A DNA stretch of 64,000 nt from Octopus sinensis (lineage: Eukaryota), in contig NC_043005.1 in assembly GCF_006345805.1 (NCBI RefSeq), positions 78,926,001-78,990,000 of the forward strand. Reading direction: 5' to 3'. The position numbers and the translations under genes are program-made. This document shows positions 1-63,520 of this stretch, piece by piece (within the stretch, counting starts at the first letter, position 1; each line of letters starts with the position of its first letter). The notes beneath the pieces were generated by a model, which made no database searches, was not told where the DNA came from, and saw only the letters and a program-made list of their open reading frames with translations.

Positions 1-312
1 TTTGGTGAAGAAGCATGGCGGGTAGAAAAGACAGTGTGTATAGAAGTCGTGCAGGGTTTAAATTGGACAAACAAACGGGGGGGGGGTGCACGTAACGCCG
101 CAATAATATAAGAATGAATGTTTTTATATATATATATATATATATATATACACTACAGAATATAAGAAATTTTCTCACGCAGGGTGGTTGTGAAGACAGC
201 TAAGAAAATCGAGTAAATACCTTTCAGAACACGGAAAAAAGTTGTTACCTTGCGTTCAATAATGTTTATTCTCTGTAGAATACCGACTCACGCACTATTT
301 ATAAGATTATTC

Positions 313-3867: not shown

Positions 3868-4258
3868 GGTGAGCTGGCAGAAACGTTAGCTCGCCAGGCG
3901 AAATGCTTGCCGGTATTTCGTCTGCCGTTACGTTCTGAGTTCAAATTCCGCAGGGGTCGACTTTGCCTTACATCCTTTCGGGGTCGATTAAATAAGTACC
4001 AGTTACGCACTGGGGTCGATATAATCGACTTAATACGTTTGTTTGTCCTTGTTTGTCCTCTCTGTGTTTAGCCCCTTGTGGATAGTAAAGAAATAGGTAT
4101 TTCGTCTGTCTTTGTGTTCTGAGTTCAAATTCCGCCGAGGTCGACTTTGCCTTTCATCCTTTCGGGGTCGATAAATTAAATACCAGTTGCGTACTGGGGT
4201 TTATCTAATCGACTGGACCCCTCCCCTAAAATTTTGGGCTTTCTGCCTAGAGTAGAAA
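3868..4258 (+). mobile_element. Family D SINE, headless tandem dimer
   Basis: Head GAGCTGGCAGAAACGTTAGC, body, linker ..CCCCTTGTGGATAGTAAAGAAATAGG, then a restart at TATTTCGTCTG and the terminal tail CCTAGAGTAGAAA. Confidence 0.9.
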
Positions 4259-4296
4259 CTAATATATATATATATATGTGTGTGTATGTGTGTTTC

Positions 4297-4445
4297 ATAC
4301 TTATTTCTTTATTGCCCACAAGAGGCTAAACATAGAGGAGACAAAGAAGGACAGACAAAAGGATTTAGTCAATTACATCGACCCCACTGCGTAACTGGTA
4401 CTTAATTTATCGACCCCGAAAAGATGAAAGACACAGTCGAACTTA
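4297..4445 (-). mobile_element. Family D SINE 3' part with alternative (D2) tail
   Basis: The reverse complement ends ..CTCTTGTGGGCAATAAAGAAATAAGTAT. Confidence 0.75.
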
Positions 4446-4552
4446 AAGAAGCCTAATTCTTTAAGAATTTGCTGGATATTGAAACGAAAATTTTCAGGCA
4501 CCACACCTCAATGTGATCGTCCTCCGTAATCGCACAATGTCGTCAATGTTTT

Positions 4553-4790
4553 ACATAGCTAGAGCAGTGAGATGACAGATTCCTTAGCACACCGGGCCAA
4601 ATGCTAAGCGGCATTTCGTACGTCTTTGCATTCTGAGTTGAAAGCCCTCCGCGGTCGACTTTGCCTTTCATCCTTCTTTTCGTGGGTGATAGAGGTCGAT
4701 AAAATAAGCAACAGTTGAGCCCTGAGGCTGATGTAATCGACTTATCTCCACTCTGACCTTGCTGGCTCGTGCCGAAATTTGAAACCAAAT
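4553..4790 (+). mobile_element. Family D SINE
   Basis: GCGGTCGACTTTGCCTTTCATCC body with a tRNA-like head. Confidence 0.75.
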
Positions 4791-8164: not shown

Positions 8165-9280
8165 AATATTGATTTTAAATGTTGGCATAAGGGCAGCAAT
8201 TTCGAGGAAGGAGATGAATCGGTTACATTGATGTCCGGTTCTCAACTGGAACTTATTTTTTCGATCCCGAAAGGACGAAAGGCAAAGTAGAGCCCGGCGG
8301 AATTTGAAGTCAGTATGTAAATTCGGAAGAAATATTTATTTCTACTCTAGGCACAAGGCCTTGAAAATTTATGGGCAAGGAGCTATTCGATTATATCGAC
8401 TCCAGTGCGTAACTGTTACTTAATTTATCGACCCCGAAAGGATGAAAGGCAAAGTCGACTTCGGCGGAATTTGAACTCAGATCATAACAGCAGACGAAAT
8501 ACCTATTTCTATTTCCTTACTACCCACAAGGGGCTAAACACAGAGAGGACAGACAAACAGATTAAGTCTGAACTTAGCGGCAGACGAAAAACCTATTTCT
8601 TTACTACCCACAAGGAGCTAAACACAGAGGGGAAGAACAAGCACAGACAAACAGATTAAGTCGATTATATCAACCCCAGTTCGTAACTGGTACTTAATTC
8701 ATCTACCCCGAAAGGATAAAAGGCAAAGTCGACCTCGGCGGAATTTGAACTCAGAACGTAGCGGCAGACGAAATACGGCTACGCATTTCGCCCTGTGTGC
8801 TAACGATTCTGCCAGCTTGCCGCCTTAAATTCGGAAGAAATAATGCGTTTTGATGTTTAGAAGAATGGGTGATTAGTCGATGTAATCGATGCTAGTAATC
8901 GACTGGTACTTTCCATTACCGACCCCGAAGGAATAAAAGACAAAGTTTAATTTTGTGGGATTTGAACGCAGTATGGAAAGAAGCGGGAGACATACAATAT
9001 GGCATTTTACTTGACGCTTAAAACGATTCTTTCGGCGCCTCATTAAAATTTTAAAACGAAATCTTTTCTACTATAGGTACAAGGCCTGAAATTTTAAGAG
9101 AGGAGGCTAGTCGATTACATCGACACCGGTACATGACTGGTACTTATGTTTTCGACCCCGAAAGTATGAAAAGCACGTTAGACCATGACAGAATTTGAAC
9201 TCAGAACTTATAATCGAGGTATGAAATATTATTAGCGTTTTGCCCGGCGCGCTAACGATTCTGCCAGTTTGCCGCATTTA
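8165..9280 (-). mobile_element. Cluster of 4-5 same-orientation family D SINEs, including a D2-linker multimer (about 8335-8830)
   Basis: Repeated GAAAGGCAAAGTCGACCTCGGCGGAATTTGAACTCAG. Junction GACGAAATACCTATTTC is seen, with a variant at about 8585. Confidence 0.85.
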
Positions 9281-12454: not shown

Positions 12455-13065
12455 TTATTTTACTTGTTTCAGTCATTTGACTGTGGCCATGCTGGAGCAC
12501 CGCCTTTGATCGAGCAAATCGACCCCAGGGCTTATGCTTTGTAAGCCTAGCACTTATTCTATCGATCTCTTTTGCCGAACCGCTAAGTTACGGGGACGTA
12601 AACACACCAGCATCTGTTGTCAAGCGATGGTGGGCGGGACTATTACAGGCACACAAACATATACACACACACACATATACAAATATATATGTATCCAAAC
12701 ATGAAAACGCAAAGAGAAAACACAATAACGCGAGGACGTGGAACAAGTATAGTATTATTGGACGCTCAGGAAAGAAGGAAGGAAGGAGGGTTTAACGTTT
12801 CGAGCGGAGCTCTTTGTCAAAAACATAGGAAAAGGAAAGATCCAAAGAAGGGAAGACGGAGGAAAAGAAATCGCCAACATTATAATGTGACACGCGGTCA
12901 CATTATATATATATATATATATACGACGGGCTTCTTTCAGTTTCCGTCTACCAAATCCACTCACAAGGCTTTGGTTGGCCCGAGGCTATAGAAGAAGACA
13001 CTTGTCCAAGGTGCCACGCAGTGGGACTGAACCTGGAACCATGTGGTTGGTAAGTGAGCTACTTT
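12455..13065 (-). mobile_element. Family C SINE interrupted in its internal microsatellite
   Basis: The 3' half at about 12455-12690 and the 5' half at about 12905-13065 flank a foreign 210-bp unit. Confidence 0.85.
12691..12903 (-). mobile_element. Penelope/retrozyme-like unit with a decayed hammerhead
   Basis: Homologous to 58565-58765. The minus strand reads GTTT-TTGACAA-A-GAGC-TCC-GCTC-GAAA-CGTT-AAAC at 12824-12790. Confidence 0.75.
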
Positions 13066-20864: not shown

Positions 20865-21247
20865 TATTGCGTCATCCCATAAGTAATGTAGCTTTTTTTT
20901 ATACTTCTTTTATCTTTCAAAATTAAAATATCAAAGTTCTTTTTTAATCTAAAACATACTCTCTTTCATTTTCTACAATGCTCTTCCATCTATCTAGTAC
21001 ACTTGTAAGTCCCCTCTTCCAAAACTTATTTGTACATGACGAAAAATACTCCTTCAGTATTTTTACCTCGTCTGCAGAATTCATATTTTCTCAGTCCAAA
21101 TAATTTTAAAGACTGCGAAATAAATGATAATCAGATGGGGCAATGTCCGGCGAATATGGTGGGTGGGGCATTATTTCCCATTCAGACTCCTCCAGCCTTT
21201 GGAATATCACCCTCGCTGTATGTGGCAAAGCATTATCGCAACAGAGA
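20865..21247 (-). pseudogene. mariner transposase C-terminus plus 3' TIR
   Basis: Minus-strand translation DNALPHTA..WEIMPHPPYSPDIAPSDYHLFRSL*..KFWKRG..DRWKSIVENEREYVLD* carries the mariner YSPDxAPxD motif. It is followed by the TIR-like end TTACTTATGGGATGACGCAA and TA. Confidence 0.9.
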
Positions 21248-21258
21248 ATGTGATCGAA

Positions 21259-22013
21259 CTGGTAGAGATTTTAGCACGCCGGACGAAATGCTTAGCGGTA
21301 TTTCGTCTGCCGTTACGTTCTGAGTTCAAATTCCGCCGAGGTCGACTTTGCCTTTCATCCTTTCGGGGTCGATTAAATAAGTACCAGTTAAGCACTGGGG
21401 TCGATATAATCGACTTAATCCGTTTGTCTGCCTTTGTTTGTCCTCTCTGTGTTTAACCCCTTGTGGGTAGTAAAGAAATAGGTATTTCGTCTGCCGCTAC
21501 GTTCTGAGTTCAAATTCCGCCGAGGTCGACTTTGCCTTTCATCCTTTCGAGGTCGATAAATTAAGTACCAATTACGCACTGGGGTCGATATATAATTGAC
21601 TTAATCACCTTGTCTGTCCTTGTTTATCATCTTGTGTTTAGCCCCTTGTGGGTAGTAAAGAAATAGGTATTTCGTCTGCCGCTACGTTCTGAGTTCAAAT
21701 TCCGCCGAGGTCGACTTTGCCTTTCATCCTTTCGAGGTCGATAAATTAAGTACCAATTACGCACTGGGGTCGATATATAATTGACTTAATCACCTTGTCT
21801 GTCCTTGTTTATCCTCTTTGTGTTTAGCCCCTTGTGGGTAGTAAAGAAATAGGTATTTCGTCTGTCTTTACGTTCTCAGTACAAATTCCGCCGAGGTCCA
21901 CTTTGCCTTTCATCCTTTCGGGGTTGATAATTTTGTACCAGTTACGTGCTGGGGTCGATCTAATCGACTGACTTCCTCCCTTAAAATTTCGGCCCTTGTG
22001 CCTAGAGTAGAAT
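21259..22013 (+). mobile_element. Family D SINE tetramer (one head, four bodies) with a 14-bp TSD
   Basis: Units of about 185-200 bp restart at TATTTCGTCTG after the linker GTAGTAAAGAAATAGG. AGAATGTGATCGAA occurs at 21245-21258 and 22014-22027. Confidence 0.92.
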
Positions 22014-22714
22014 AGAATGTGATCGAAGACAAAAGTGGGTAATGGGTGTGTATGCCATGTTTCGGGGTTTGGCCTGGAGGACACTTGCTCAAGGTGCCAC
22101 TAACCTACCACGGCCTCCGAACACATTGCTCATATAGCCCCCGCATACAGCGGGCTGGTATGTAAACATTACAAATCTGTAATGGTCACCGTTACTGCTC
22201 TTCGGGATATGTGATTAGAATGTCGCAGAATAGACCGGCAGGATGATCTCTGGTGTCGACCAGGAACGAGCTGGTTAGATAACAGACATAGTTTCAGTTG
22301 ATCATGTTTGGGAAACCAGCCGGGATTAGTATTGAGGGTTGATTCTGATAGGACCTTACCGAGATGCCTGAGGACTCTACCCCCATGACTCTTTCCCTAC
22401 TCAGAAATAATGGGTGAAGATAGATACTGAAACAACAACAACAATATCAGCAGCAGCAGCAGCAACAGCAGCAAGTACGACAACAACAACAGAATTTTAA
22501 CTCATTCTTTGGAACTGGTATTGTTAGAAAGCATAGGAGGGGACCGCTACGTAATTGCTAGAAATAACTCGTAATCCACATTAAATCATATTCTTTCGTC
22601 ATAAATAAGGCCGGGTACATTCAACATTGTGATTACAGATAAACGGAATAGTCACGCCAGGAACGCCATCGAACATAAATCTGCACAATTAGCCTTTAAG
22701 TTCTTAGCAAAAAC

Positions 22715-27742: not shown

Positions 27743-27779
<37 letters not shown>

Positions 27780-27879
27780 CATACATACCTATCTATATGT
27801 ATATATGTATATTGGTTCAGGCCATATCTAAGTTAATACCACCACCTGATAGGATTAGCTAAATATTTTTTATGTCACG

Positions 27880-28390
27880 TTTTGTTGTATCATGGTCCGT
27901 TCGAGTAAGAAGTTCTTGTTGAGTGAGTTATATCCAGGTATGGGTTGCTTATCTGGCATTCCTTGAAGAAATTTGTCCAGATCCCGTTTAAAAGTGATTT
28001 GATCCTTTTCCTCTTTGTTCTGTTTCGGCACAATGTTAAATAGGGCAGGGCCTGCTGAAGAAAAGAGATTGTGTTGCAGTGTATTTATGTGTTGTGATCA
28101 TGTACTGGGTAGGGGACTATGGCCCGTGGTCCTCGCCTTCGATGAATTTTGATGCTAAAGATAAGGTCGTTTGGGCAATGCTTGTGGTATATTCACCACA
28201 TCGTGCAAGTGATATATCGCTCACCGCGGCGCTGGAGAGAGTAGATTTTCAATGCGTTAAGGCGGTCCCTATGATCGACTTCATTCATGCCCTTAATCTT
28301 TTATTGAATGACCTCTTGGGTCCCATGCAACACGATCCCTACTCCACTGTTAGCATAACAGATTTTCTACCACTGCGCTAAAGCAATTCA
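27880..28390 (-). mobile_element. CR1/L2-group LINE ORF2 3' end
   Basis: Minus-strand translation RIKGMNEVDHRDRLNALKIYSLQRRGERY, then after a frameshift SAGPALFNIVPK..FKRDLDKFLQGMPDKQPIPGY. Confidence 0.85.
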
Positions 28391-30054: not shown

Positions 30055-30718
30055 TTTATTCTTTTTGTACAAAGCTCTCACATCCACTTAACATACCCGC
30101 ATTTCTGGGTATCAGAAGTTTTATAGATGTTATCCTTCACTGAATTGGTAGCGAGAGTCTGGTCTTGTGCTGCAATGATCAGGCTTTCAGTGGTACGCTT
30201 CAAATCATCTCGCTCAAGCCATTCCCACGATGCAGTATTACCCATAACATCGTGTGTAGTCCTTTCAAACTGTCCATGGATTATCATTTCAAGGTCTTCT
30301 TTTCTCTTCTCATCAGCTCTTTGGTTAAGCTCTTCCTTGCCCACCATTTCATATTCATTTGCACCAATAGCTTTCGTGGCATATTGCAGGAGGTCTTCAC
30401 CACTATTTATCAAATACTCGACAAGCGTTCACCTTTCAGTTCTTATACAATGGTCTATACTAATTAATTCTCTGTCACCATTCTTTCTTTTTTATATACA
30501 GTGTGTTTGCTTTTGCTTTAGGGCGTAGCGACCCATGCAGCGTCATCAACGTTTTCGTCCTTGCATCCAGTGTTGATATTTCATCCTTCGTCCATTTGAG
30601 GATGGACGCGCAATTTTTGACCACCGTAACTGCCCAGATATTCATTTCGGTAATCAAACTTTTAGCATTCAGTTGGATTTCAACATCGTCTTCACCCTGT
30701 TTTGATACATCTCGCTGA
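30055..30718 (-). mobile_element. R4/Dong-clade LINE fragment (post-RT region to zinc finger)
   Basis: NIWAVTVV..ILKWTKDEISTLDARTKTLMTLHG..LYI and HGQFERT..WEWLERDDLKRTTESLIIAAQDQTLATN..KC. The 5' junction is in (TAA)n. Confidence 0.9.
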
Positions 30719-30719
30719 C

Positions 30720-30777
<58 letters not shown>

Positions 30778-31332
30778 GAGTAAGAGAGCAGTGCATGCCA
30801 TCAAAGTGACACTGGAGTAAAATATACGAAGCCCAATATACCCATCATTGACTACCCGTCTGATAAGGGTACACTAGGCACATACATCACAAACATATGT
30901 GCGCGACATGGTGATCTCATATCACGATAAACAGCGCATGAAGTTGCAGGTGGGACCCAGTTAGAAGTTTCTTCTGGTCGAGTAGCTCATCCTGCTCAAA
31001 AGGTCCCTGAATAAGGATTGTTTAAGGATGTTGAACGAAACACCCATGTTTCCAAAGGTGAATCATTCAAACCCCAAAGAGTTCCTCTCAACACATGGCT
31101 ATGATGCTCTCCCACTACTTCTGCCGATGAACAGAGATGCACATATCGTCAGCCACCAAGGGACATGGTCAACTGGTTAGGGTCAAACAACTGACAAGCA
31201 ACTCTGTGGTATTGATCAAGATATTTGTTGTAGACTATCTTTAAAACCAATATAAAACAATGTACTTTATAACGCTTCCAATCAGTTAAGATCAAAACGT
31301 ATGGGAGCCAATATCTAGTACTGCATCAGGGC

Positions 31333-35874: not shown

Positions 35875-37365
35875 TTGCGCATGAGCGAGACAGAGTTGTG
35901 TGTTTGACACTGAAGCTGTAAGACGTGCTTTTGAAGCCGTTTAAATTGAAGATTTTTGAAACTCAGCCGTAAGGTAAGATTTTTTGCGGTCTAGTGGGGA
36001 CCTGTTGTCTGTCGCAATTAATTATTACAAACAAGAAGTCCTCACTGGATTCTAGTCTGCCTGAGGCCGAGTGAAAATTTTTGTTTCACTTAATTGTGAA
36101 AATTATTGGTTTGATGGGCGTATCCTGCCGCAAAATTTTGTTTGAAAATAGTGTTTCAACAATATTGTTCCTGTCAAGGAGTACCTATAAGACGAAAATT
36201 GGAATGATCTTTTAACTGTTTTACAATTGCGTCAAAAATTTGGCCTGGAGTACCGAGTGGCCTTTTCTGCGTTTTGAACCGTTGCTCTCTCTTCATCTAT
36301 CTTTTATTTAAAAAACTCTTTATTGAACTGTTATTTTTTTTTCTCTCCTTCCTTTTTATTTGGACGTTTTTCCTCTTCCTTCTTTTTCCTTAATTATTTT
36401 ATATTTTAACAACTGTATTTTTGGACTTATCTAGAAAAAACATGGCAAATAACAATGGAAAGTTGGTGGAGTGGGAAATTAAACCACACAAAAAGTGGTT
36501 AAAAGAACTTGAAAGTAAGACCTACTCTAGGACCCTCGACGCCATTGCCGTTTTCAGACAGGATATAATCGAAAGAGAGCTGGTAGAATTTAAGCCAGTG
36601 ATTAAGTTTATCACTCAGTGGGGTGGGGGTCACATACGCAACCGTGTGGCTGCTGTTTGACTCCCCGTGAATTTGCGAGCCAGTCCCTAGAGGTGTAATG
36701 AAATTTTGTTTCTTCCCGCTTATTGTGGGAAGAATTTGACGAGGGCTTGAGTTTGCGGCTTGCCACCCGGTGTTGTGCCCGAATGGATAGAAGATACTAT
36801 CCGCCGGGGTCTGAGTGAGAGTAGCACCAAGCTCCTCAACGTAAATATTCTGCCTGCAGCTGACTGGGAGGGGTTAAAAGCGGTTTTGACCCTATGGACC
36901 TAGTCAGCCGAAAGTCTGGTATTTCCAGACTTTTTGAGAATGGCCGGATCTAGGTATCTAGTGATGCTTGAGGGACGCCCCCACAAGTGTCATCGGTGCT
37001 TGAAGCTTGACCATATAAAAAAGAACTGTTCTCAAGGGCAAAGCAAAGTCCTGGAGCGGTTGACAGAGACCTCTGCAGAGGAGGGAATGAAGGCAGCCGG
37101 GAAGAAGGAGGACTCCCGAAAGAAAAGCCCCAAAAGGAAGAAAGTAAACAATAATGGATGATCACCGAAGGATCCTGGAGATGAGGGAGGGGAGGCGAAT
37201 CTCCAGGTCACGGACGAGACGCTGCCTCCCCCAGTCGAGAAGAAAAAAGAGGAAGTGGAGGAGAAACGTGACATTGCCGGCAGTCGGAGACATGGCGCCG
37301 GAGTGTCACGAGACCTCGTCGGTTGTGCCATCGGAGGAGGGGAGATACCATTAGCGGGAATTGTG
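35875..37365 (+). mobile_element. 5' part of a Tx1/L1-like LINE between a family C SINE head (35835-35874) and tail (37366-37391)
   Basis: Long leader followed by a gag-like ORF1. No ORF2 follows. Confidence 0.65.
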
Positions 37366-53236: not shown

Positions 53237-53606
53237 TATTATTATTATTTTATTATTATTATTATTATTATTTATTATTATTATTAGTAGTAGTAGTAGT
53301 AGTAGTAGTTGTAGTAGCAGTAGCTGGAACAAATGACATGAAGCAATTTTTCTGACGCTCCAAAGGGTCTTCCTGGCCACCCTCTGAAATAATTGTATCT
53401 ATTTTAGGCACAAGGCCGACAGATTTGAAAGTTGGCGGTAAGTCGATACCATCACCACCTTACAGTAACTTGAATATTAATTTCTTAACCCCCACCCTCC
53501 ACCCGAGATTATGAAAGCAAAATCGACTTCTTTGGGATTTGGAGGCAGAACCTAAGACCGGACATTTTAACGATTCTGCCAATCTATTGACACATTCTCA
53601 AAAGAA

Positions 53607-53639
<33 letters not shown>

Positions 53640-53856
53640 TGATGTTGATTTCAGATTTAGGCACGAGGCAACAAATTCAGTGAGGAGAGTAAGTCGATTA
53701 CATCGACTCCAGTGCTCAACAGGTACTTATTTTGTCGACCTCGAGACATGAAATTAAAGTTGCCCTCGTCGGAATTTGAACTCAGAACGCAGGGACAGAC
53801 GAAATGACGCTAAGTATTTTGCCGAGAACGGCAACGATTCTGTCAGCTCGCCACCT

Positions 53857-53928: not shown

Positions 53929-54229
53929 GTTTGTCCCTTCTCGAGCCATGCCTGGCTCATAGGGCCGGTTTCCAGGTTTCCTTGTCATATAGGTTCCCCA
54001 CCTGGACGGAACGCCAGTTCGTTGCAGGTGAGCTGCAAGATGCAGGAGAAAAGAGTGAGAGAAAGATGTGGCGAAAGTGTCAGCAGAAGTTCGCCATTAC
54101 CTTCTGCCGGAGCCGCGTGGAGCTTAGGTGATTCACTCATAAACACACACATCGCCCGGTCTGAGATTCGAACCCGCGATCCCTTGACTGCGAGTCCGCT
54201 GCCCTAACGACTAGGCCATGTTCCTCCAC
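53929..54229 (-). mobile_element. Chimeric SINE: family B head and body with family A tail
   Basis: Head GCAGCGGACTCGCAGTC and body CTAAGCTCCACGCGGCTCCGGCAG are B-type. Tail CGTTCCGTCCAGGTGGGGAA..GAAACCGGCCCTATGAGCCAGGCATGGCTCGAG is A-type. Confidence 0.85.
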
Positions 54230-54239
54230 AATAATAATG

Positions 54240-54294
<55 letters not shown>

Positions 54295-54295
<1 letters not shown>

Positions 54296-54946
54296 GTCGA
54301 CAGAGTGGATGGAACCATTTCCTATATCACGAACGAATACCCTAGACTTGCCCAAAACCACTACAGGTTGTGGCGACAAGCCCTGGTAGTGAAAGTGCCA
54401 CTTTGGAAACTGTGTGAAAAGTGGGAGCTAGAGAGCGGCAAGACGTGGTGTGAGCAGAAATCGCAGAGAGTGGCGGAGTCAGGGACTAGAAAATCCTCTG
54501 GGATTTTCCAATCTAAATCGAACAGGTGCTAGAGCATAACCGGCCGGATATGACTGTGGACAAAATACACCACATATGGTATATAGCTGATGTTTCATGT
54601 CCCTTTAACCCACGAATAGTCAAGAAGGAAGGCGAAAAGATAAATAAATACACATCTCTTAACTACGAAATAACCTGGCAATGGAAAATGAAGAAAGTGA
54701 AGATATTGCCATTTATTCTTCGGTTCTTGGTGAAAGTATCAGAAAGCATGAAGGAGAGTATAAAGGAAATTGAAATAGAGTGCCCAGTTGAGCTTGCAAA
54801 AGGTTTGCTCCCTTAGCACAGCCAGAATAATCAGGGAAGTACGAGATAGCTGAAAAGAATATATAGCATGATATTGAAGGCAGCAAGTAGTAAACCCGGT
54901 ACGCATGCAAGATTCCAGGAGCTCCAAGAAACCTGTGATAAAGAGA
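54295..54946 (+). mobile_element. 5'-truncated R4/Dong LINE: RLE domain and 3' end within (TAA)n
   Basis: PRLAQNHY..WKLCEKW..LEHNRPDMTVDK..IADVSCPFNPRIVKKEGEKINKYTSLNYEITWQWKMKKV (PD..D..K RLE motif). (AAT)n lies on both sides. Confidence 0.9.
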
Positions 54947-55429
54947 AATAATAATGATAATAATCCTATCTATAATAATAGATACAAGGCCTGAAATTTT
55001 AGGGAAGGATAGTCAATTACATCGACCTCAGTACTTGACTGGTACTTAATTTATTGACCCCGAATGGATGAAAGGCAAAGCCGACCTCGGCGGGATTTGA
55101 AGGTAGAACGTAAAGACGGACGAAATGCCGCTAAGCATTTCGTCCGATGTCCTAACTATCCTGCCACCTCGCCGACTTACTACTACTGCTACTACTACTA
55201 CTAATAATAATTATTATTTTTTCTACTATAGGAAGAAGGTCAGAAATTTGTGAGGAGGGGATTAGTCGATTACACCAACCCCAGTGGTACTTATTTCATC
55301 GAGCTCGATAAAAAGGATTAAAGGCAAAGTCGACCTCGGCAGAATTTGAACTCAGAACGTAGAGGCATGCACGCGAAATACCGTTAAACATATCGCCCGG
55401 CGTGCTAGCGATTCTACCAGCTCGCCATA

Positions 55430-58450: not shown

Positions 58451-58511
58451 ATAAAAGTATACACCCCTCACACACATATGTATATATATATATAATATAT
58501 ATATATATATT

Positions 58512-58565
<54 letters not shown>

Positions 58566-58663
58566 GTTAGTCCAAACATGAAAGCACAAAAAAACACAAC
58601 AACGGGAGGACGAGGATCAAATATAGTATTATTGGACGCTCAGGAAGGAAGGGAAGAAGGAGG

Positions 58664-58698
58664 GTTTAACGTTTCGAGCGGAGCTCTTCGTCGGAAAC
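58664..58698 (-). ncRNA. Minimal type I hammerhead (U4C core variant), copy 1
   Basis: GTTT-CCGACGA-A-GAGC-TCC-GCTC-GAAA-CG-T-T-AAAC. Confidence 0.7.
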
Positions 58699-58800
58699 AT
58701 AGGAGAAGGAAAGAACCAGAGAAGGGAAGACAGAGGAAAAAAAATCGCCAACGGTACACCTTATTTATATATATATATATATATGTATATATTATGTATA

Positions 58801-58832
<32 letters not shown>

Positions 58833-58851
58833 CTATATATATATATATATT

Positions 58852-58911
<60 letters not shown>

Positions 58912-59009
58912 GTTAATCCAAACATGAAAGCACAAAAAAACACAACAACGGGAGGACGAGGAACAAATATAGTATTATTGGACGCTCAGGAAGGAAGGGA
59001 AGAAGGAGG

Positions 59010-59044
59010 GTTTAACGTTTCGAGCGGAGCTCTTCGTCGGAAAC
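59010..59044 (-). ncRNA. Minimal type I hammerhead (U4C core variant), copy 2
   Basis: Identical 35-nt motif, 346 nt from copy 1. Confidence 0.7.
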
Positions 59045-59160
59045 ATAGGAGAAGGAAAGATCCAGAGAAGGGAAGACAGAGGAAAAAAAATCGCCAACGG
59101 TACACCTTATTTATATATATATATATTGTATATATATATGTATATATATGTATATATATA

Positions 59161-59193
<33 letters not shown>

Positions 59194-60926
59194 AGAGCAG
59201 GAATGGCTGTGTGTTACGAAGCTTGTTTCACAACCACATGGTTCCGGGTCCATGTCACTGCATGGCACCTCAAGCTGGTGTCTTCTAATACTTCCTTCGG
59301 GGTTGTTAGAACAACCTCGTCGTAATATGCCCTTGTGTGTGCGAGTGTGTGTGTGTGTGAGTTGTGTGCGAGTTGTGTGTGTCTTTGTGCATATGTTTGT
59401 CTCCCACCACCGCTTGTCAACTGGTGTTGGTGTATTAATGTCCTTCTTATTTAGCGGTTCTGCAAGTTCGAATAAAAAATTTCTTGAATTCCCTTTTGTT
59501 AGAGATTACGAAACAACAGCATAACAACAACAACAACAACAACAACAACAATAACAACACAAACAACCACAGTAGCTGCAGTAGCAGAGGGAACAGCCCC
59601 GTTTATATGTCCAGCCAATGAGGTGGACTGAGTGAAAATGCCAACTACTAGAAATAACTACCATATATTTATTTATATCAGTATATATATTAGTGCTTAC
59701 CAACCATTAATTTTCTAATTACGGATCACTTCAATTCCTCTTCAGCCAAGATGAGCCATCATAACCATTCGATGCATTGTAGAAGTATAAACAATTTATT
59801 GCAGATAAATTCTAACAACAAAATCTTATACAGACCCCTAAAAGTTTTATAGAACCCCGTTGAGGGCCACTGATTTATATCATACAACGATAACTTTAAA
59901 AACAAACGACATGTTGGATAATGAAATCTTAGGTATACAATGCATTAAAATTTTGGGGGATTGCCAAGGCTAGAAATCCTTTTAATGCAGGTTTACTGCT
60001 CAGGCTAACTGGGGCTACAATTAATAAGGTCGACTAGTTTAACATTCTCATTGGGAAACTTGGATACGTGATTAATTCAGATGGATTTTACTTATTTTGG
60101 GTTTATACCCTCAAATAATGATATTGTTATTATTAGTAGTAGTTGTAGTGTTTGTGTAAATAATGTACCCCATAAAAAAATGTAAACAAAACTGCTACAA
60201 TTAGTTGATCAATATCTTAAACCAAGCCTTAACTGTAATTACCAGTAGAGGTGATTCTAGGACCAGGATTCAATTCAATTTAAAAAGGTAATGCTATCAC
60301 CTTCAACTGGCTACCAACGCAGGACGCATGTTTGAATCAGTTCACTTTGAAAACGTCGAGAGTGACGACTCATGATGAAATTGCAACGACAAGGGAGCGT
60401 AATTGCATACAGAACAATGGGAAATCGCTACAGTCGAAACATATGTCGGTCAGTATTATATATTCTCTTTTACTCTTTATTTCTTTCAGTCATTTGACTG
60501 TGGCCATGTTGGAGCACCGCCTTTAGTCGAGCGAAACGACCCCAGAACTTATTCTTTGTAAGCCTAGTACATATTCTATCGGGCTCTTTCGCCGAACCGC
60601 TAATTTACCACGCTGTGGAACTGAACCCGAAACCATGTGGCTGGTAAGCAAGCTACTTACCACACAGCCACTCCTACGCCTATATGCTGTAGAAATTTTT
60701 TTAATAAAAATGTTTTGTACGTGAATAAATCTCCACTCTCCGCTTCTTTATCAATTATGTACTCTACAGAATATTTCCAGTTCTGTATAGGAACACGGAA
60801 CTAACCAACGAGTGAAGCTGACCAGCACAAGTATCTCTTTTAAGCTTGAGTATTGTATAATTGGACCGTTGCGAATGCCCGGTATCAATAACAATTTGTG
60901 AGATGGTACGGTATTCACCAAGATAA

Positions 60927-61157
60927 GGCGGCGAGCTGGCAGAAACGTTAGCACACCGGGTGAAATGCGTAGCCATATTTCGTCTGCCATTACGTTCTGA
61001 GTTCAAATTCAGCCGAGGTCGACTTTGCCTTTTATCCTTTCGGGGTCGATAAATTAAGAACCAGTTACACACTGCGGTCGATGTAATCGACTTAATCTGT
61101 TTGTCTGTCCTTGTTTGTCCCCTCTGTGTTCAACCCCTTGTGGGTAGTAAAGAAATA
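60927..61157 (+). mobile_element. Family D2 SINE monomer with a 17-bp flanking direct repeat
   Basis: Full head GGCGGCGAGCTGGCAG, ending GTAGTAAAGAAATA. GGTATTCACCAAGATAA occurs at 60910-60926 and 61158-61174. Confidence 0.92.
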
Positions 61158-61249
61158 GGTATTCACCAAGATAATTCATCCTTTTTATACTCTATTCAAT
61201 ATACGTACATATCACACGTACACACACAAACATATATTTTTTATTCTTT

Positions 61250-61700
61250 TATTCTTTTAATTCTTTCAGACATTCGACTGAATGTCTGAATCATGCTGGG
61301 GCACCGTCTTTAGTCGAACAAATCGACCCCAGGACTTATTCTTTGTAACCTAGTACTTATTCTGTGGATCTCTTTGCCTATCCGCTAAGTTACAGGGACG
61401 TAAACACACCAGCATCAGATGTCAACCGATGGTGGTGGGACAAACACAGGCGCACAAGCATACACACACTCACACACACACACACGCACGCACACACACG
61501 TACATAGACACACACACACAAACACATATATATACGACGGGATTCTTTCAGTTTCCGTCTACTAAATCCACTCACAAGGCTTATGTTGGCCCGAGGCTAT
61601 AGTAGAAGACATTTGCCCAAGATGCCACACAATGGGACTCAACCCGGAACCATGTGGTTGTTAAGCAAGCCACTTACCACATAGCCACGCCTGCGCCTGG
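61250..61700 (-). mobile_element. Family C SINE
   Basis: Full reverse copy ending CCACGCCTGCGCC. Confidence 0.88.
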
Positions 61701-62119
61701 CTACTAACCACATTTCTTTATTATATACGTATCTATGCGTGTGTGTGTGTGTGTGTGCGCGCGTAGATGTGTGTGTATCTTTGTGACTGTCTTTTGCTCG
61801 CTACCGCATCGGTGTTGTATTTATGTTCATGTTACTTAGCTGTTCGGCAAAGACACCGATAAAATATATATACCAAGCTTAAAGAATTAAGTACAGGGTC
61901 GAATTTTTCGACTACAAATTCTTGAGGGTGGTGTCCCAGCATGGCCACAGTCTAATGGCTGAAACAAGTAGAAGACAAAAAGTAAAAGAAAAGATCAGTT
62001 AGCTATTAGCGGCAGAAGCAACCTTTATAATGATGTGACAGAGCCTCGCTAATTTTCACGGATGGTTTCTAGCATTATAAATAGAGTAAAAATGCGATCG
62101 AAAACCGTGTAAAATATTC

Positions 62120-62590
62120 TTTTCTACTCTAGGCACAAGGTCCGAAGTTTTAGGGAAGGGGAACAGTCGATTATATCGACCCCAGTGCGTAACTGGTACT
62201 TATTTAATCGACCTCGAAAGGATGAAAGGCAAAGTCGACCTTGGCAGAATTTGAACTCAGAACGTAGCGGCCGACGAAATACTGCTAAGCATTTCGCCCG
62301 GTGTGCTAACGTTTCTGCCAGCTTGCTGCCTTAGCCATGTAATATACTTATTTATGTGTTGCCCATAAGGGGCTAAACATAGAGGGGACAAGCAAGAACA
62401 CACAAAGGGATTACGTCGATTACATCGACACCCAGTGCGTAACTGTTACTTATTTAATCGACTCCGAAAGAATGAAAGGCAAAGTCGACCTCGGCAGAAT
62501 TTAAACTCAGAACGCAACGGCAGACGAAATACTGCTAAGTATTGCGCCCGGCGGGCTAAAGATTCTACCTGCTCGCTGCCCTAGCTATGT
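62120..62590 (-). mobile_element. Two family D SINEs in tandem (D2 then D, each with a head)
   Basis: Two GAAAGGCAAAGTCGACC.YGGCAGAATTT bodies, with the D2 tail between them. Confidence 0.85.
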
Positions 62591-62639
62591 AAAACATTGA
62601 CGACATTCTGCGATTACGGGTGACGATCATATTGAGGTG

Positions 62640-63520
62640 TGGTGCCTGAAAATGTTCGTTTCAATATCCATCAAATTCTTAAAGAATCAGGCGTCTTTAA
62701 AATTTCATTCCACATGATTTTCAATGATAAAAACAAAACAAGAAATAAAAAACAACAAAAAATAAAAAAAAACAACAAAAACAAAGCAAGAAATAAAAAA
62801 ACAACAAAAATCAAAACAAACAAAAAAAAACAACAAAAAGAACTGGGGATTCATTATGTTGCTGCAAAATTTATTAACAAGGTGAGTACCTGTCACGCAT
62901 AGTCAGGACATGTCGAATTCTGATAAATTCGCCGAATTCTGATAAAATGAAAACTGGGAAAAATCAAATAGATAATCAAACATAGATATATGTGGCTGCG
63001 ATGTCGAATGAGAAAGTATATCGCCGCGATTAGAATAAAAACATAACTGTCTTAAACCTTAACGCGATGCAAGATGTGAGTTTTGAATGGAAGGGCGTTG
63101 AACTTCGTGTATTTGATCCACGTTCTCAGACCTTCAATAAAGAAATTTAGCTTGATACACTGAGGTGATTGGGAGAGAAATTCCGCAGGAAAGGGCGAGA
63201 GTTTTAGTCAAAACAAATCTAGATGCAGTACCATGACCATTCTTATGCAGTAAAAGATTCTTCATTCACAGCCATCCTTCTTTACCCAAAGGAATTGGCG
63301 CCGCAGTCTTTGTTATTTATGCTTTGCTCCTAAAGTTGAAATCCATAACTTTTACGCCTTGTTACATTTATTTTGCTAGCACTCTTCTGTTAGAACAATT
63401 ATAAGCAAGTCGTCTATAAAGACGTTCTATAACACAGTCATATTACAGATAAATCATATACAAACAGTGTAACATCGTGTGAAAAAACAGTAATAAATAC
63501 GTAACGTTGAAAGAGATAGA
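62640..63520 (+). pseudogene. Heavily decayed mariner transposase
   Basis: NVRFNIHQILKESG, LGIHYVAAKFI (cf. LGMRRVAAKFVP), FEWKGVELRVFDPRSQTFNKE (cf. FDxxGIVHxEFxPxGQTVNxE), LR*LGEKFRRK..YHDH and LAP..KLK. An A-rich insert splits the N-terminus. Confidence 0.7.

What the first reader, a model, noticed from the sequence alone, without database searches (positions are those of the whole stretch)
60910..61174. The array 'linker' is a real 3' tail ending in GGTAT(T), suggesting a self-targeting SINE
A full monomer here ends with the linker sequence and is bracketed by a 17-bp repeat that begins GGTATT. Other D2 ends read AAAGAAATAAGTAT (about 4297) and AAATAAGTAT (about 62345). The SINE body itself contains GCGGTATTTCG. 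I infer that the RNA 3' end GGUAU(U) anneals to GGTATT targets during TPRT, including the site inside earlier family D copies. The 5' junction would then be resolved by homology, which would produce exactly the headless multimers seen.
Basis: inference. Interest (0 to 1): 0.72.

Follow-up and report, generated by a model that had tools for sequence, protein, structure and literature searches.

The report
SINE tail matching its own hairpin site
A short retrotransposon (SINE) subfamily really does end in ...AAATAGGTAT and inserted here at a GGTATT target, and the same five bases inside its relatives mark where headless tandem copies are joined, but 64 kb cannot show whether this is self-targeted insertion or reverse-transcriptase template switching.

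Summary
A 231-bp SINE monomer (60927-61157) lies between perfect 17-bp direct repeats GGTATTCACCAAGATAA (60910-60926, 61158-61174). Its "linker" 3' part is a true tail. It is a diverged homologue of the other subfamily's (D1) tail, it keeps a small CTTGT stem-loop through compensatory changes, and it ends two other copies.

In all three insertions with clean target-site duplications (TSDs), the TSD starts with the last 3-5 bases of the tail. That is ordinary microhomology priming in target-primed reverse transcription (TPRT).

All six array junctions join the D2 tail to GGTATTTCGTCTG. I found that this 13-mer is exactly the 3' arm of a 13-bp hairpin in the SINE head.

For self-targeting:
- One whole array is inserted, with TSD and head, at this same site of an older copy.
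- One array has older-looking outer parts than inner units.
- Family copies are strongly clustered.

Against:
- Only one D2 insertion has a TSD, so no target logo is possible.
- About 35 of 36 non-SINE GGTATT sites are empty.
- Host variants next to junctions are not duplicated.

Template switching or a multimeric source remain live rivals. No further DNA of this genome could be fetched. Verdict: partly supported, a new variant of known tail-guided retrotransposition, of moderate interest.

The parts
60910..60926 (+). 5' copy of the target-site duplication, GGTATTCACCAAGATAA
   Evidence: a 17/17 match to 61158-61174, ending directly at the SINE 5' end.
60927..61162 (+). Full-length D2 SINE monomer. 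The body runs to 61157 (...GTAAAGAAATA). GGTAT at 61158-61162 is shared between the tail and the TSD.
   Evidence: covers family positions 1-237 and is 82-90% identical to other D2 units.
61158..61174 (+). 3' copy of the TSD. Its first 5-6 bases equal the D2 tail end.
60957..60986 (+). Head hairpin of this copy. In most family members the 3' arm reads GGTATTTCGTCTG; here it reads CATATTTCGTCTG and the stem is weakened.
   Evidence: a 13-bp stem in the consensus (-19.5 kcal/mol, z -2.9). This copy folds at -7 kcal/mol.
61091..61162 (+). D2-specific 3' tail (the 'linker'), with a small stem-loop ACCC-CTTGT-GGGT at 61133-61145 and the terminal AAAGAAATAGGTAT
21259..22013 (+). Four-unit array [11..237][48..237][48..237][48..166 + D1 tail]. 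Junction GGTATT sites start at 21481, 21666 and 21852. The TSD AGAATGTGATCGAA lies at 21245-21258 and 22014-22027. The array splits a mariner remnant.
3868..4263 (+). Two-unit array [D2 full][48..166 + D1 tail], with the junction at 4096. No clear TSD, because the flanks are microsatellite.
8335..8825 (-). Three-unit array [D2 full][D2 unit lacking about positions 73-160, tail with a GAAATA duplication][48..166 + D1 tail]. The TSD TATTTCTTCCGAATTTA lies at 8826-8842 and 8318-8334.
8170..8334 (-). Older, diverged family copy whose homology starts at about family position 45. The 8335-8825 array is inserted at its GCAT|TATTTC site, which is family position 47/48.
   Evidence: the empty site was rebuilt by joining the flanks. 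Its local alignment to the D1 reference starts at reference position 45.
4297..4443 (-). 5'-truncated D2 copy (positions 90-236) ending AAAGAAATAAGTAT. No TSD found.
62344..62580 (-). Full D2 copy ending AAATAAGTAT, with a leader of about 125 bp (to 62705). It is followed directly by a complete D1 copy.
62110..62330 (-). Full D1 copy with head and 11-13 nt of leader (ACATGGCTAAG), lying head-to-tail after the D2 copy above

Best explanation
D2 is a working subfamily of a SINE family dependent on a LINE (autonomous retrotransposon). Its RNA ends in ...GUAAAGAAAUA(G/A)GUAU.

Shown:
- During target-primed reverse transcription (TPRT) the nicked DNA end primes on the last 3-5 bases of the RNA, so TSDs begin with the tail's own end.
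- The family carries the same pentamer at positions 48-52, the first bases of the 3' arm of a 13-bp hairpin in the head.

Inferred:
- D2 RNA is preferentially reverse-transcribed from nicks at that site in resident family copies.
- The staggered top-strand end (family positions 48 to about 62) is homologous to the inside of the new cDNA.
- Second-strand synthesis therefore starts there, and the new unit is added without a head and without a visible TSD.
- Repeated hits, plus occasional unequal crossing-over (units 2 and 3 at 21481-21857), grow the array.
- When the host copy is too diverged for this annealing, the insertion keeps its head and a normal TSD (8335-8825 in 8170-8334).
For: - Tail/TSD overlap in 3 of 3 clean TSDs: GGTAT, AGAAT and TAT.
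- All six junctions read AAATAGGT(A/T)T|TTCGTCTG.
- An RT-type signature sits at one junction: the tail end is duplicated, AAGGAAATAGAAATAGGTAT.
- The 8335-8825 array, with TSD and head, lies at family position 47/48 of an older copy.
- The 5' junction of the 21259 array shows microhomology, CGA(A/G)CTGG.
- In that array the last unit has 8 private changes against 0 in unit 1 (p=0.007), including two in the B-box-like motif.
- The head of unit 1 differs at 5 of 38 positions against 3 of 119 in its body (p=0.02).
- The heads of the two most similar first units share no private change, which argues against a common multimeric parent.
- Family units are clustered: 8 of 17 gaps are under 100 bp, P about 7e-9.
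- Tail-to-target correlation is a published property of RTE-related SINEs and LINEs (PMC6007223).
Against: - Only one D2 insertion has a TSD.
- About 35 of 36 GGTATT sites outside the family are empty, so some extra preference must be assumed.
- Host-type variants at nt 14-17 after the junction are never copied into the upstream unit in any of the 3 arrays. This requires short overlaps or 3' trimming.
- The first unit at 8588-8824 has a head of the same subtype as the stand-alone D2 copy (GCGTAGCC), as expected if a whole D2 RNA was copied.
- The age argument is soft. All three perfect TSDs flank units with 4-7% 'private' changes, so much of that variation probably comes from diverse source genes.
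- The pooled head-versus-body excess is only p=0.075 after calibration on stand-alone copies.
- TATTTC sites are common (114 in the window, about 15% of them inside family copies). The nested hit is therefore weak evidence for family-specific homing.
Confidence: 0.4

Rival explanations
1. The array forms in a single event by template switching or jumping. TPRT starts on a D1 RNA. At the apex of the head hairpin (position 48) the nascent cDNA end (...GAAATACC-3') leaves the template. This happens either because the hairpin re-forms or because the RNA is cut in the loop, like a tRNA half. The cDNA end then re-primes on the GGUAU 3' end of a D2 RNA, possibly the same RNA repeatedly. Only the last RNA is copied to its 5' end, so the whole array is made at once with one TSD.
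For: - The junction coincides exactly with the loop/3'-arm boundary of a strong hairpin.
- Each array carries one outer TSD.
- Each unit keeps its own variants right after the junction.
- Units 2 and 3 are identical, as if one RNA was read twice.
- One unit has an internal deletion and one tail has a slippage duplication.
- Acceptors are always D2, the only tail that matches the site.
- It explains the high occupancy of family-internal sites without any DNA-level preference.
- A D2 tail is joined to a D1 copy that still carries 11-13 nt of leader, which fits an end-to-end jump.
Against: - The last unit at 21852-22013 carries 8 private changes including B-box damage, while unit 1 has none. The initiating D1 RNA would have to come from a decayed copy.
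- First-unit heads look older than their bodies in two arrays.
- One to three switches would be needed in 3 of about 11 events. From my own knowledge, that is far above the usual rate of chimeric retrocopies.
Confidence: 0.3
2. The source is multimeric, with later DNA-level changes. A composite element [D2 unit(s)][headless D1 unit] arose once or a few times. It is transcribed from the first head and retrotransposes as a unit using the D1 tail. Unit number then changes by unequal crossing-over or replication slippage. Stand-alone D2 copies come from priming on the internal junction of such RNAs.
For: - All three arrays end in a D1 tail and have one outer TSD.
- The first units at 3868 and 21259 are 96% identical, and their last units share the variants TCTGTCTTT and ATCTAATCGACTG.
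- Units 2 and 3 are identical.
- D2 units contain no TTTT run (sequence).
- The target of the finding's copy matches the array junction over 6 nt, GGTATT.
- The terminal pentamer of the tail matches the element's own internal pentamer in 3 of 5 copies.
Against: - Units 2 and 3 are a different D2 type from unit 1 (93%) and from unit 4 (85%), so they did not arise from their neighbours by unequal exchange.
- The heads of the two similar arrays share no private variants.
- The third array uses other subtypes.
- D2 tails end two copies followed by unrelated DNA.
- The D2 tail keeps a stem-loop by compensatory change, as a functional tail would.
Confidence: 0.2
3. Chance resemblance or assembly artefact. 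The GGTAT overlap at 61158 would be coincidental, and the arrays would be collapsed or mis-joined repeats.
For: Only one TSD-bearing D2 copy exists in the window, and no reads or second assembly could be consulted.
Against: - The repeat is a perfect 17-mer, and the 5-nt overlap has a chance of about 1e-3.
- There are six identical junctions in three loci with different flanks, different unit variants and their own TSDs.
Confidence: 0.03

Closest known systems
RTE-related SINEs and LINEs whose TSD start correlates with their 3' microsatellite-like end (Nishiyama & Ohshima 2018, PMC6007223)
   Same: The first bases of the TSD equal the last bases of the element (3 of 3 here). Priming depends on pairing between the nicked DNA and the RNA 3' end. 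The tail is not poly(A).
   Different: Here the motif also lies inside the element's own family, and headless tandem units start there. The T-stretch about 10 nt upstream described in that paper could not be assessed with 3 sites. No RTE partner was identified.
Microsatellite- or repeat-specific LINEs that insert into sequences identical to their own tails (Dong in (TAA)n, Waldo, Mino, Kibi/Koshi), and Alu insertion into A-rich tails of older Alus. This is from my own knowledge and was not checked here.
   Same: Target equals tail, giving head-to-tail clusters. This family is strongly clustered in the same orientation, and several copies abut (TAG)n or (TAA)n runs.
   Different: Those cases keep full units with heads. 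Here the preferred site is internal, so the added units lack heads.
Microhomology- or homology-mediated 5' end attachment, and chimeric L1 insertions that recombine with resident L1s (Zingler 2005; Gilbert, Symer 2002). This is from my own knowledge.
   Same: It would explain the 5' truncation at a fixed point and the absence of a TSD. A 3-nt 5' microhomology is seen at 21255-21262.
   Different: The homology here would be 13 nt or more and supplied by the TSD itself. That has not been described as a regular route to arrays.
Template jumping by non-LTR reverse transcriptases (R2) and chimeric retrocopies such as U6-L1 (PMC4476161; bioRxiv 10.1101/081950 for SINE template switching)
   Same: It joins the 3' end of one RNA to a cDNA made on another in one TPRT event, with short microhomology.
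   Different: Known chimeras are rare and mostly join at RNA 5' ends. Here the join is internal, at a hairpin apex, and is repeated up to three times.
Dimeric and multimeric SINEs (Alu, Bov-A2 with tandem A units), and SINE-derived satellites (Hydromantes Hy/Pol III, Xenopus satellite 1; review PMC9659126)
   Same: These are tandem SINE-derived units, some headless, that can expand by unequal exchange.
   Different: Those multimers are fixed architectures or long satellites. Here unit number (2-4) and unit subtype vary between loci, and the junction is at the exact RNA 3' end.

Membership tests
SINE (short non-autonomous retroposon inserted by TPRT) | Short non-coding repeat flanked by target-site duplications | tested here: met
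   231-237 bp units. TSDs of 17, 17 and 14 bp. At least 18 insertion units in 64 kb.
SINE (tRNA-derived head, Pol III promoter) | Head recognisable as a tRNA, with A and B boxes | tested here: inconclusive
   ARAGORN finds no tRNA. Rfam gives no match even at E<=10 on 60900-61200. By eye, a B-box-like GAGTTCAAATTCC and a weak A-box-like TGGCAGAAACG are present, and the head has a 13-bp hairpin rather than a cloverleaf.
SINE with a LINE-derived 3' tail (stringent type) | 3' tail shared with a partner LINE | tested here: inconclusive
   No LINE in the window carries the tail core. One LINE ORF2 C-terminal fragment (27873-28097, minus strand) ends ...ATAGATAGGTAT(GTAT)n. It shares only 8 terminal nt with D2, which is not significant. 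The D1 and D2 tails conserve a CTTGT stem-loop with compensatory changes.
Tail-guided (microhomology-primed) TPRT | TSD begins with the element's own terminal bases | tested here: met
   GGTAT, AGAAT and TAT in the three clean TSDs.
Tail-guided (microhomology-primed) TPRT | Consistent target motif across many independent insertions (logo) | not testable with these tools
   Only 3 D2 ends lie outside arrays, and only 1 has a TSD. No more DNA of this genome could be fetched.
Self-targeting (nested) insertion | Insertion with its own TSD inside another family copy at the proposed site | tested here: met
   The array 8335-8825 has the TSD TATTTCTTCCGAATTTA at family position 47/48 of copy 8170-8334. 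It carries a D1 tail and keeps its head. About 15% of TATTTC sites lie in family copies, so this is weak as proof of homing.
Self-targeting (nested) insertion | Inner units younger than the outer (host) parts | tested here: inconclusive
   Array 21259 gives p=0.007 (unit 4 against unit 1) and p=0.02 (head against body). Array 3868 shows no difference between units, and the calibrated pooled test gives p=0.075.
Multimeric SINE propagated as one unit | Copies share architecture and diagnostic variants throughout | tested here: inconclusive
   Two arrays share first- and last-unit subtypes (96% identity and shared variants). However, their heads share no private change, unit number is 2, 3 and 4, and the inner units are of another subtype.
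Tandem repeat grown by unequal crossing-over | Neighbouring units more alike than units at other loci | tested here: not met
   True only for units 2 and 3 at 21481-21857 (100% identical in the core). Unit 1 is closest to a unit in another array (96%), and unit 4 is 85-88% identical to its neighbours.

The most novel reading that the evidence does not exclude
A SINE subfamily homes into its own relatives. Its RNA 3' end pairs with a pentamer at the apex of the family's head hairpin. TPRT then starts inside resident copies, and the target-site overhang, being homologous to the incoming cDNA, sets the 5' end. Each hit would add one headless unit. That would be an RNA-mediated engine growing tandem arrays one unit at a time, and a direct route from dispersed SINE to satellite-like DNA.
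Probability: 0.38. Interest if true: 0.65.

Novelty: new variant of a known kind. Interest (0 to 1): 0.5.

Why it matters
How dispersed retroposons turn into tandem arrays is usually put down to unequal crossing-over after a chance duplication. A SINE whose own tail-to-body match makes reverse transcription add units in register would be a distinct, testable mechanism. This holds whether the units are added by nested TPRT or by template switching. It could help explain the very large and diverse SINE load reported for some mollusc genomes. It would also give a natural system for studying how much 3' microhomology and 5' homology steer non-LTR integration. The exact coincidence of the junction with a hairpin apex is a concrete handle for experiments.

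Tried and rejected
- More copies from outside the window: exact-pattern scans for the D2 tail in metagenome contigs and viral contigs gave 66 loci, all chance 19-21-nt matches with no SINE.
- Protein route to contigs of the same genome:
  - The array ORF query gave nothing.
  - The LINE-like fragment gave nothing.
  - The mariner fragment gave 228 hits, all at 59% identity or less and from other animals.
  - The look-up of encoding contigs for a window ORF was not on record.
- Literature: four diagnostic 19-20-mers occur in no held paper. Octopus and mollusc SINE papers describe no such arrays. My impression that the window is cephalopod rests on memory only and was not verified.
- tRNA origin: ARAGORN and Rfam were negative.
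- Partner LINE: there is no tail-core match outside SINEs. The 8-nt match at 27776-27800 is not significant. Pfam finds nothing in two LINE-like fragments.
- Paralogous empty sites for the three TSD-bearing insertions: none in the window.
- Private substitutions as an age clock: judged unreliable, because perfect TSDs flank units with 4-7% private changes.
- TSD for the 62110-62330 copy: an imperfect ATATT(TT)ACA(Y)GG match overlaps a conserved leader, and I left it unresolved.

Full report
**What is there.** The window is AT-rich, microsatellite-rich animal DNA full of short retroposons. I did not establish the species.

At 60927-61157 lies one complete unit of a SINE family. The unit is flanked by GGTATTCACCAAGATAA at 60910-60926 and 61158-61174, 17/17 identical. 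The left repeat ends exactly at the family's 5' end (GGCGGCGAGC). The right repeat starts after ...GTAAAGAAATA.

BLAST of this unit against the window finds 23 segments. They include three arrays:
- 3868-4263(+), with units [1..237][48..166 + D1 tail].
- 21259-22013(+), with units [11..237][48..237][48..237][48..166 + D1 tail]. Tandem Repeats Finder reports period 185 and 3.6 copies.
- 8335-8825(-), with units [1..237][a unit lacking about positions 73-160][48..166 + D1 tail].

**The linker is a real tail.** A multiple alignment shows that the D2 3' part is a diverged homologue of the D1 tail plus an insertion of about 19 bp.
- D2 reads ...CCTCTCTGTGTTTAGCCCCTTGTGGGTAGTAAAGAAATAGGTAT.
- D1 reads ...CCTCCCTTAAAATTTCGGCCCTTGTGCCTAGAGTAGAAAAGAAT.

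Both keep a small stem-loop with loop CTTGT. The stem is GGC/GCC in D1 and CCC/GGG in D2, with an outer A-T or G-C pair in D2. Those are changes on both sides that preserve pairing, as expected of a tail that is recognised.

D2 tails come in two forms. One is GGGTAGTAAAGAAATAGGTAT, found in all array units and in the copy of the finding. The other is GGGCAA..AAATAAGTAT, found at 4297 and 62344.

**Tail and target overlap.** Only three insertions have clean TSDs:
- The finding's copy, GGTATTCACCAAGATAA.
- The 21259 array, AGAATGTGATCGAA at 21245-21258 and 22014-22027.
- The 8335-8825 array, TATTTCTTCCGAATTTA at 8826-8842 and 8318-8334.

In each, the TSD begins with the last bases of the inserted element's tail: GGTAT for D2, and AGAAT and TAT for D1-type ends. 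For the finding's copy, the upstream TSD copy proves that the target itself read GGTATT. The chance of that is about 1e-3.

This is the known behaviour of non-poly(A) retroposons, where the nicked DNA end pairs with the RNA 3' end. It has been documented statistically for RTE-related SINEs and LINEs (PMC6007223). The 5' junction of the 21259 array also shows 3-nt microhomology.

**The internal site.** All six array junctions read AAATAGGT(A/T)T|TTCGTCTG. I found that GGTATTTCGTCTG is exactly the 3' arm of a 13-bp hairpin in the head. The 5' arm is CGGGCGAAATGCT, and the free energy is -16 to -19.5 kcal/mol with z of -2.4 to -3.7 in most copies. Headless units therefore start at the first base of that arm.

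GGTATT occurs 46 times in the window on both strands. D2 tails sit on 6 of 9 family-internal sites but on only 1 of about 36 others. Counting each array once, that is 3 of 4 events against an expected share of 20%, which I calculate as p of about 0.03. The hexamer alone does not explain the junctions.

**Evidence on how the arrays arose.**

For stepwise self-insertion into DNA:
- (a) I rebuilt the empty site of the 8335-8825 array by joining its flanks. It aligns to the family from reference position 45 (GCATTATTTC against GCAGTATTTC). A whole array, with head and a 17-bp TSD, is therefore inserted at position 47/48 of an older, roughly 70%-identical copy. Under uniform insertion the chance is about 0.2% for three events. 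However, TATTTC is common and about 15% of such sites lie in family copies, so this shows motif-guided hits rather than family-specific homing.
- (b) In the 21259 array, unit 1 has no private change over 119 bp. Units 2 and 3 are identical. Unit 4 has eight private changes (p=0.007), two of them in the B-box-like motif. The head of unit 1 differs from the family majority at 5 of 38 positions against 3 of 119 in its body (p=0.02). This looks like an old D1 copy whose head and body were separated by younger D2 units.
- (c) The heads of the two most similar arrays share no private variant.
- (d) One junction carries a duplicated tail end (GAAATAGAAATAGGTAT), a reverse-transcription signature rather than a crossover.
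- (e) Family units are strongly clustered: 8 of 17 gaps are under 100 bp, P about 7e-9.

Against it, or for a single-event template switch:
- The host-type variants 14-17 nt after the junction (TCTT.. in two arrays) are not duplicated in the upstream unit. Measured TSDs are 14-17 bp.
- The first unit at 8588-8824 has the same head subtype as the stand-alone D2 copy.
- Units 2 and 3 are identical.
- The junction sits at a hairpin apex.
- All three arrays end in D1, and none ends in D2.
- The age argument is weakened because all three perfect TSDs flank units with 4-7% private differences. Much of that variation is therefore probably inherited from diverse source genes.
- After calibrating on stand-alone copies, the pooled head-versus-body excess is p=0.075.

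**Other arrangements.** The D2 copy at 62344-62580 is followed at once by a complete D1 copy that still carries 11-13 nt of a conserved leader. The D2 copy and the copy at 4569 share a 5' leader of about 125 bp. Here a second head is kept.

The copies at 8845-9030 and 8170-8334 may be an older full-plus-headless pair joined near position 45. The upstream tail is atypical, though, and I leave this open.

**Mechanism, with probabilities.**
- About 0.7: the junctions were made by reverse transcriptase priming on the D2 3' end through the GGUAU match.
I refine it so that the target overhang (positions 48 to about 62) anneals inside the new cDNA and sets the headless 5' end.
  - 0.30: single-event template switching or jumping at the hairpin apex.
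- 0.20: a multimeric source with later unequal exchange.
- 0.03: artefact or chance.
- Unequal exchange is the simplest reading of the identical units 2 and 3 under any model.

**Comparison with known systems and novelty.** Tail-guided priming, homing to tail-like targets, homology-assisted 5' joining, RT template jumping and multimeric SINEs are all known individually.

Two things would be new. One is a SINE whose tail matches an internal site of its own family, at a hairpin apex. The other is repeated in-register addition of headless units at that site. I found no description of this in the papers searched.

I rate it a new variant of a known kind, with interest 0.5. The decisive tests (target logo, 5'-end profile, orthologous or polymorphic loci, partner LINE) need the whole genome, which these tools could not reach.

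Noticed in passing
window 21279-21320, 8757-8800(-), 62254-62306(-), 60951-60994: The SINE head contains a 13-bp hairpin (CGGGCGAAATGCT / GGTATTTCGTCTG, 4-nt loop; -16 to -19.5 kcal/mol). Headless units begin exactly at the first base of its 3' arm. The hairpin is weakened in the copy of the finding.
   Followed up: partly
tails at 61133-61145, 21456-21468, 62361-62373(-), 8346-8358(-), 21991-22005: D1 and D2 tails keep a small stem-loop with loop CTTGT. The stem is GGC/GCC in D1 and CCC/GGG in D2, which are compensatory changes that suggest a recognised 3' structure.
   Followed up: partly
window 27776-28097 (-): A LINE ORF2 C-terminal fragment (...FKRDLDKFLQGMPDKQPIPGY...) has a 3' end reading ...ATAGATAGGTAT(GTAT)n. 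Its terminal 8 nt equal the D2 tail end. (TATG)n/(ATGT)n microsatellites are abundant in the window. This is a weak lead to a partner LINE and is not significant as an alignment.
   Followed up: partly
window about 20990-21258 and 22028-22100 (-): A mariner-type transposase remnant (HPPYSPDIAPSDYHLF) is split by the 21259-22013 array. Its homologues are mariner/SETMAR-like proteins of other animals at 59% identity or less.
   Followed up: yes
window 4444-4568 (+) and 62581-62705 (-): Two family copies share a 5' leader of about 125 bp that ends TTTTACATAGCTAG just before the head. A third copy (62331-62343) keeps 11-13 nt of it. This could be an upstream promoter or flank carried along, or a larger composite element.
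   Followed up: partly
window 8170-9275 (-), 53390-53855 (-), 54975-55426 (-), 62110-62705 (-): Family copies are clustered head-to-tail in the same orientation, with spacers of 1-55 bp (8 of 17 gaps under 100 bp, P about 7e-9). Several heads are directly preceded by (TAG)n or (TAA)n runs that resemble expanded D1 tail ends.
   Followed up: partly
window 8505-8595 (-): The middle unit of the 8335-8825 array lacks about family positions 73-160, and its tail has a GAAATA duplication and a 10-bp deletion. This could be an intramolecular template jump or a later deletion.
   Followed up: no
window 60454-60690, 61260-61700, and at least 9 other places (e.g. 5043, 9588, 12449, 17014, 17933, 26803, 41509, 58367): A second, more abundant SINE-like family on both strands (5' part TTTCAGTCATTTGACTGTGGCCATGCTGG...), often with an internal (CA)n/(TG)n run.
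   Followed up: no
window 54150-54220 (-), also about 20525 (-) and 38551 (+): A third retroposon type whose head looks much more like a tRNA (GGCCTAGTGGTTAGGGCAGCGGACTCGC...GGGTTCGAATC). ARAGORN and Rfam still call no tRNA.
   Followed up: no
window 58476-59193; related unit at 12617-12991: A 346-bp unit duplicated in tandem (94% identity) that includes an (AT)n run. The same unit occurs once elsewhere.
   Followed up: no
window 30081-30873 (-), 54215-54813 (+), 36904-37158 (+): Degenerate retrotransposon-like reading frames. Two are C-terminal LINE-like pieces with no Pfam match, and one is a CCHC zinc-knuckle piece like a LINE ORF1. The piece at 54215-54813 ends in an (AAT)n-type tail that abuts a family copy.
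   Followed up: partly
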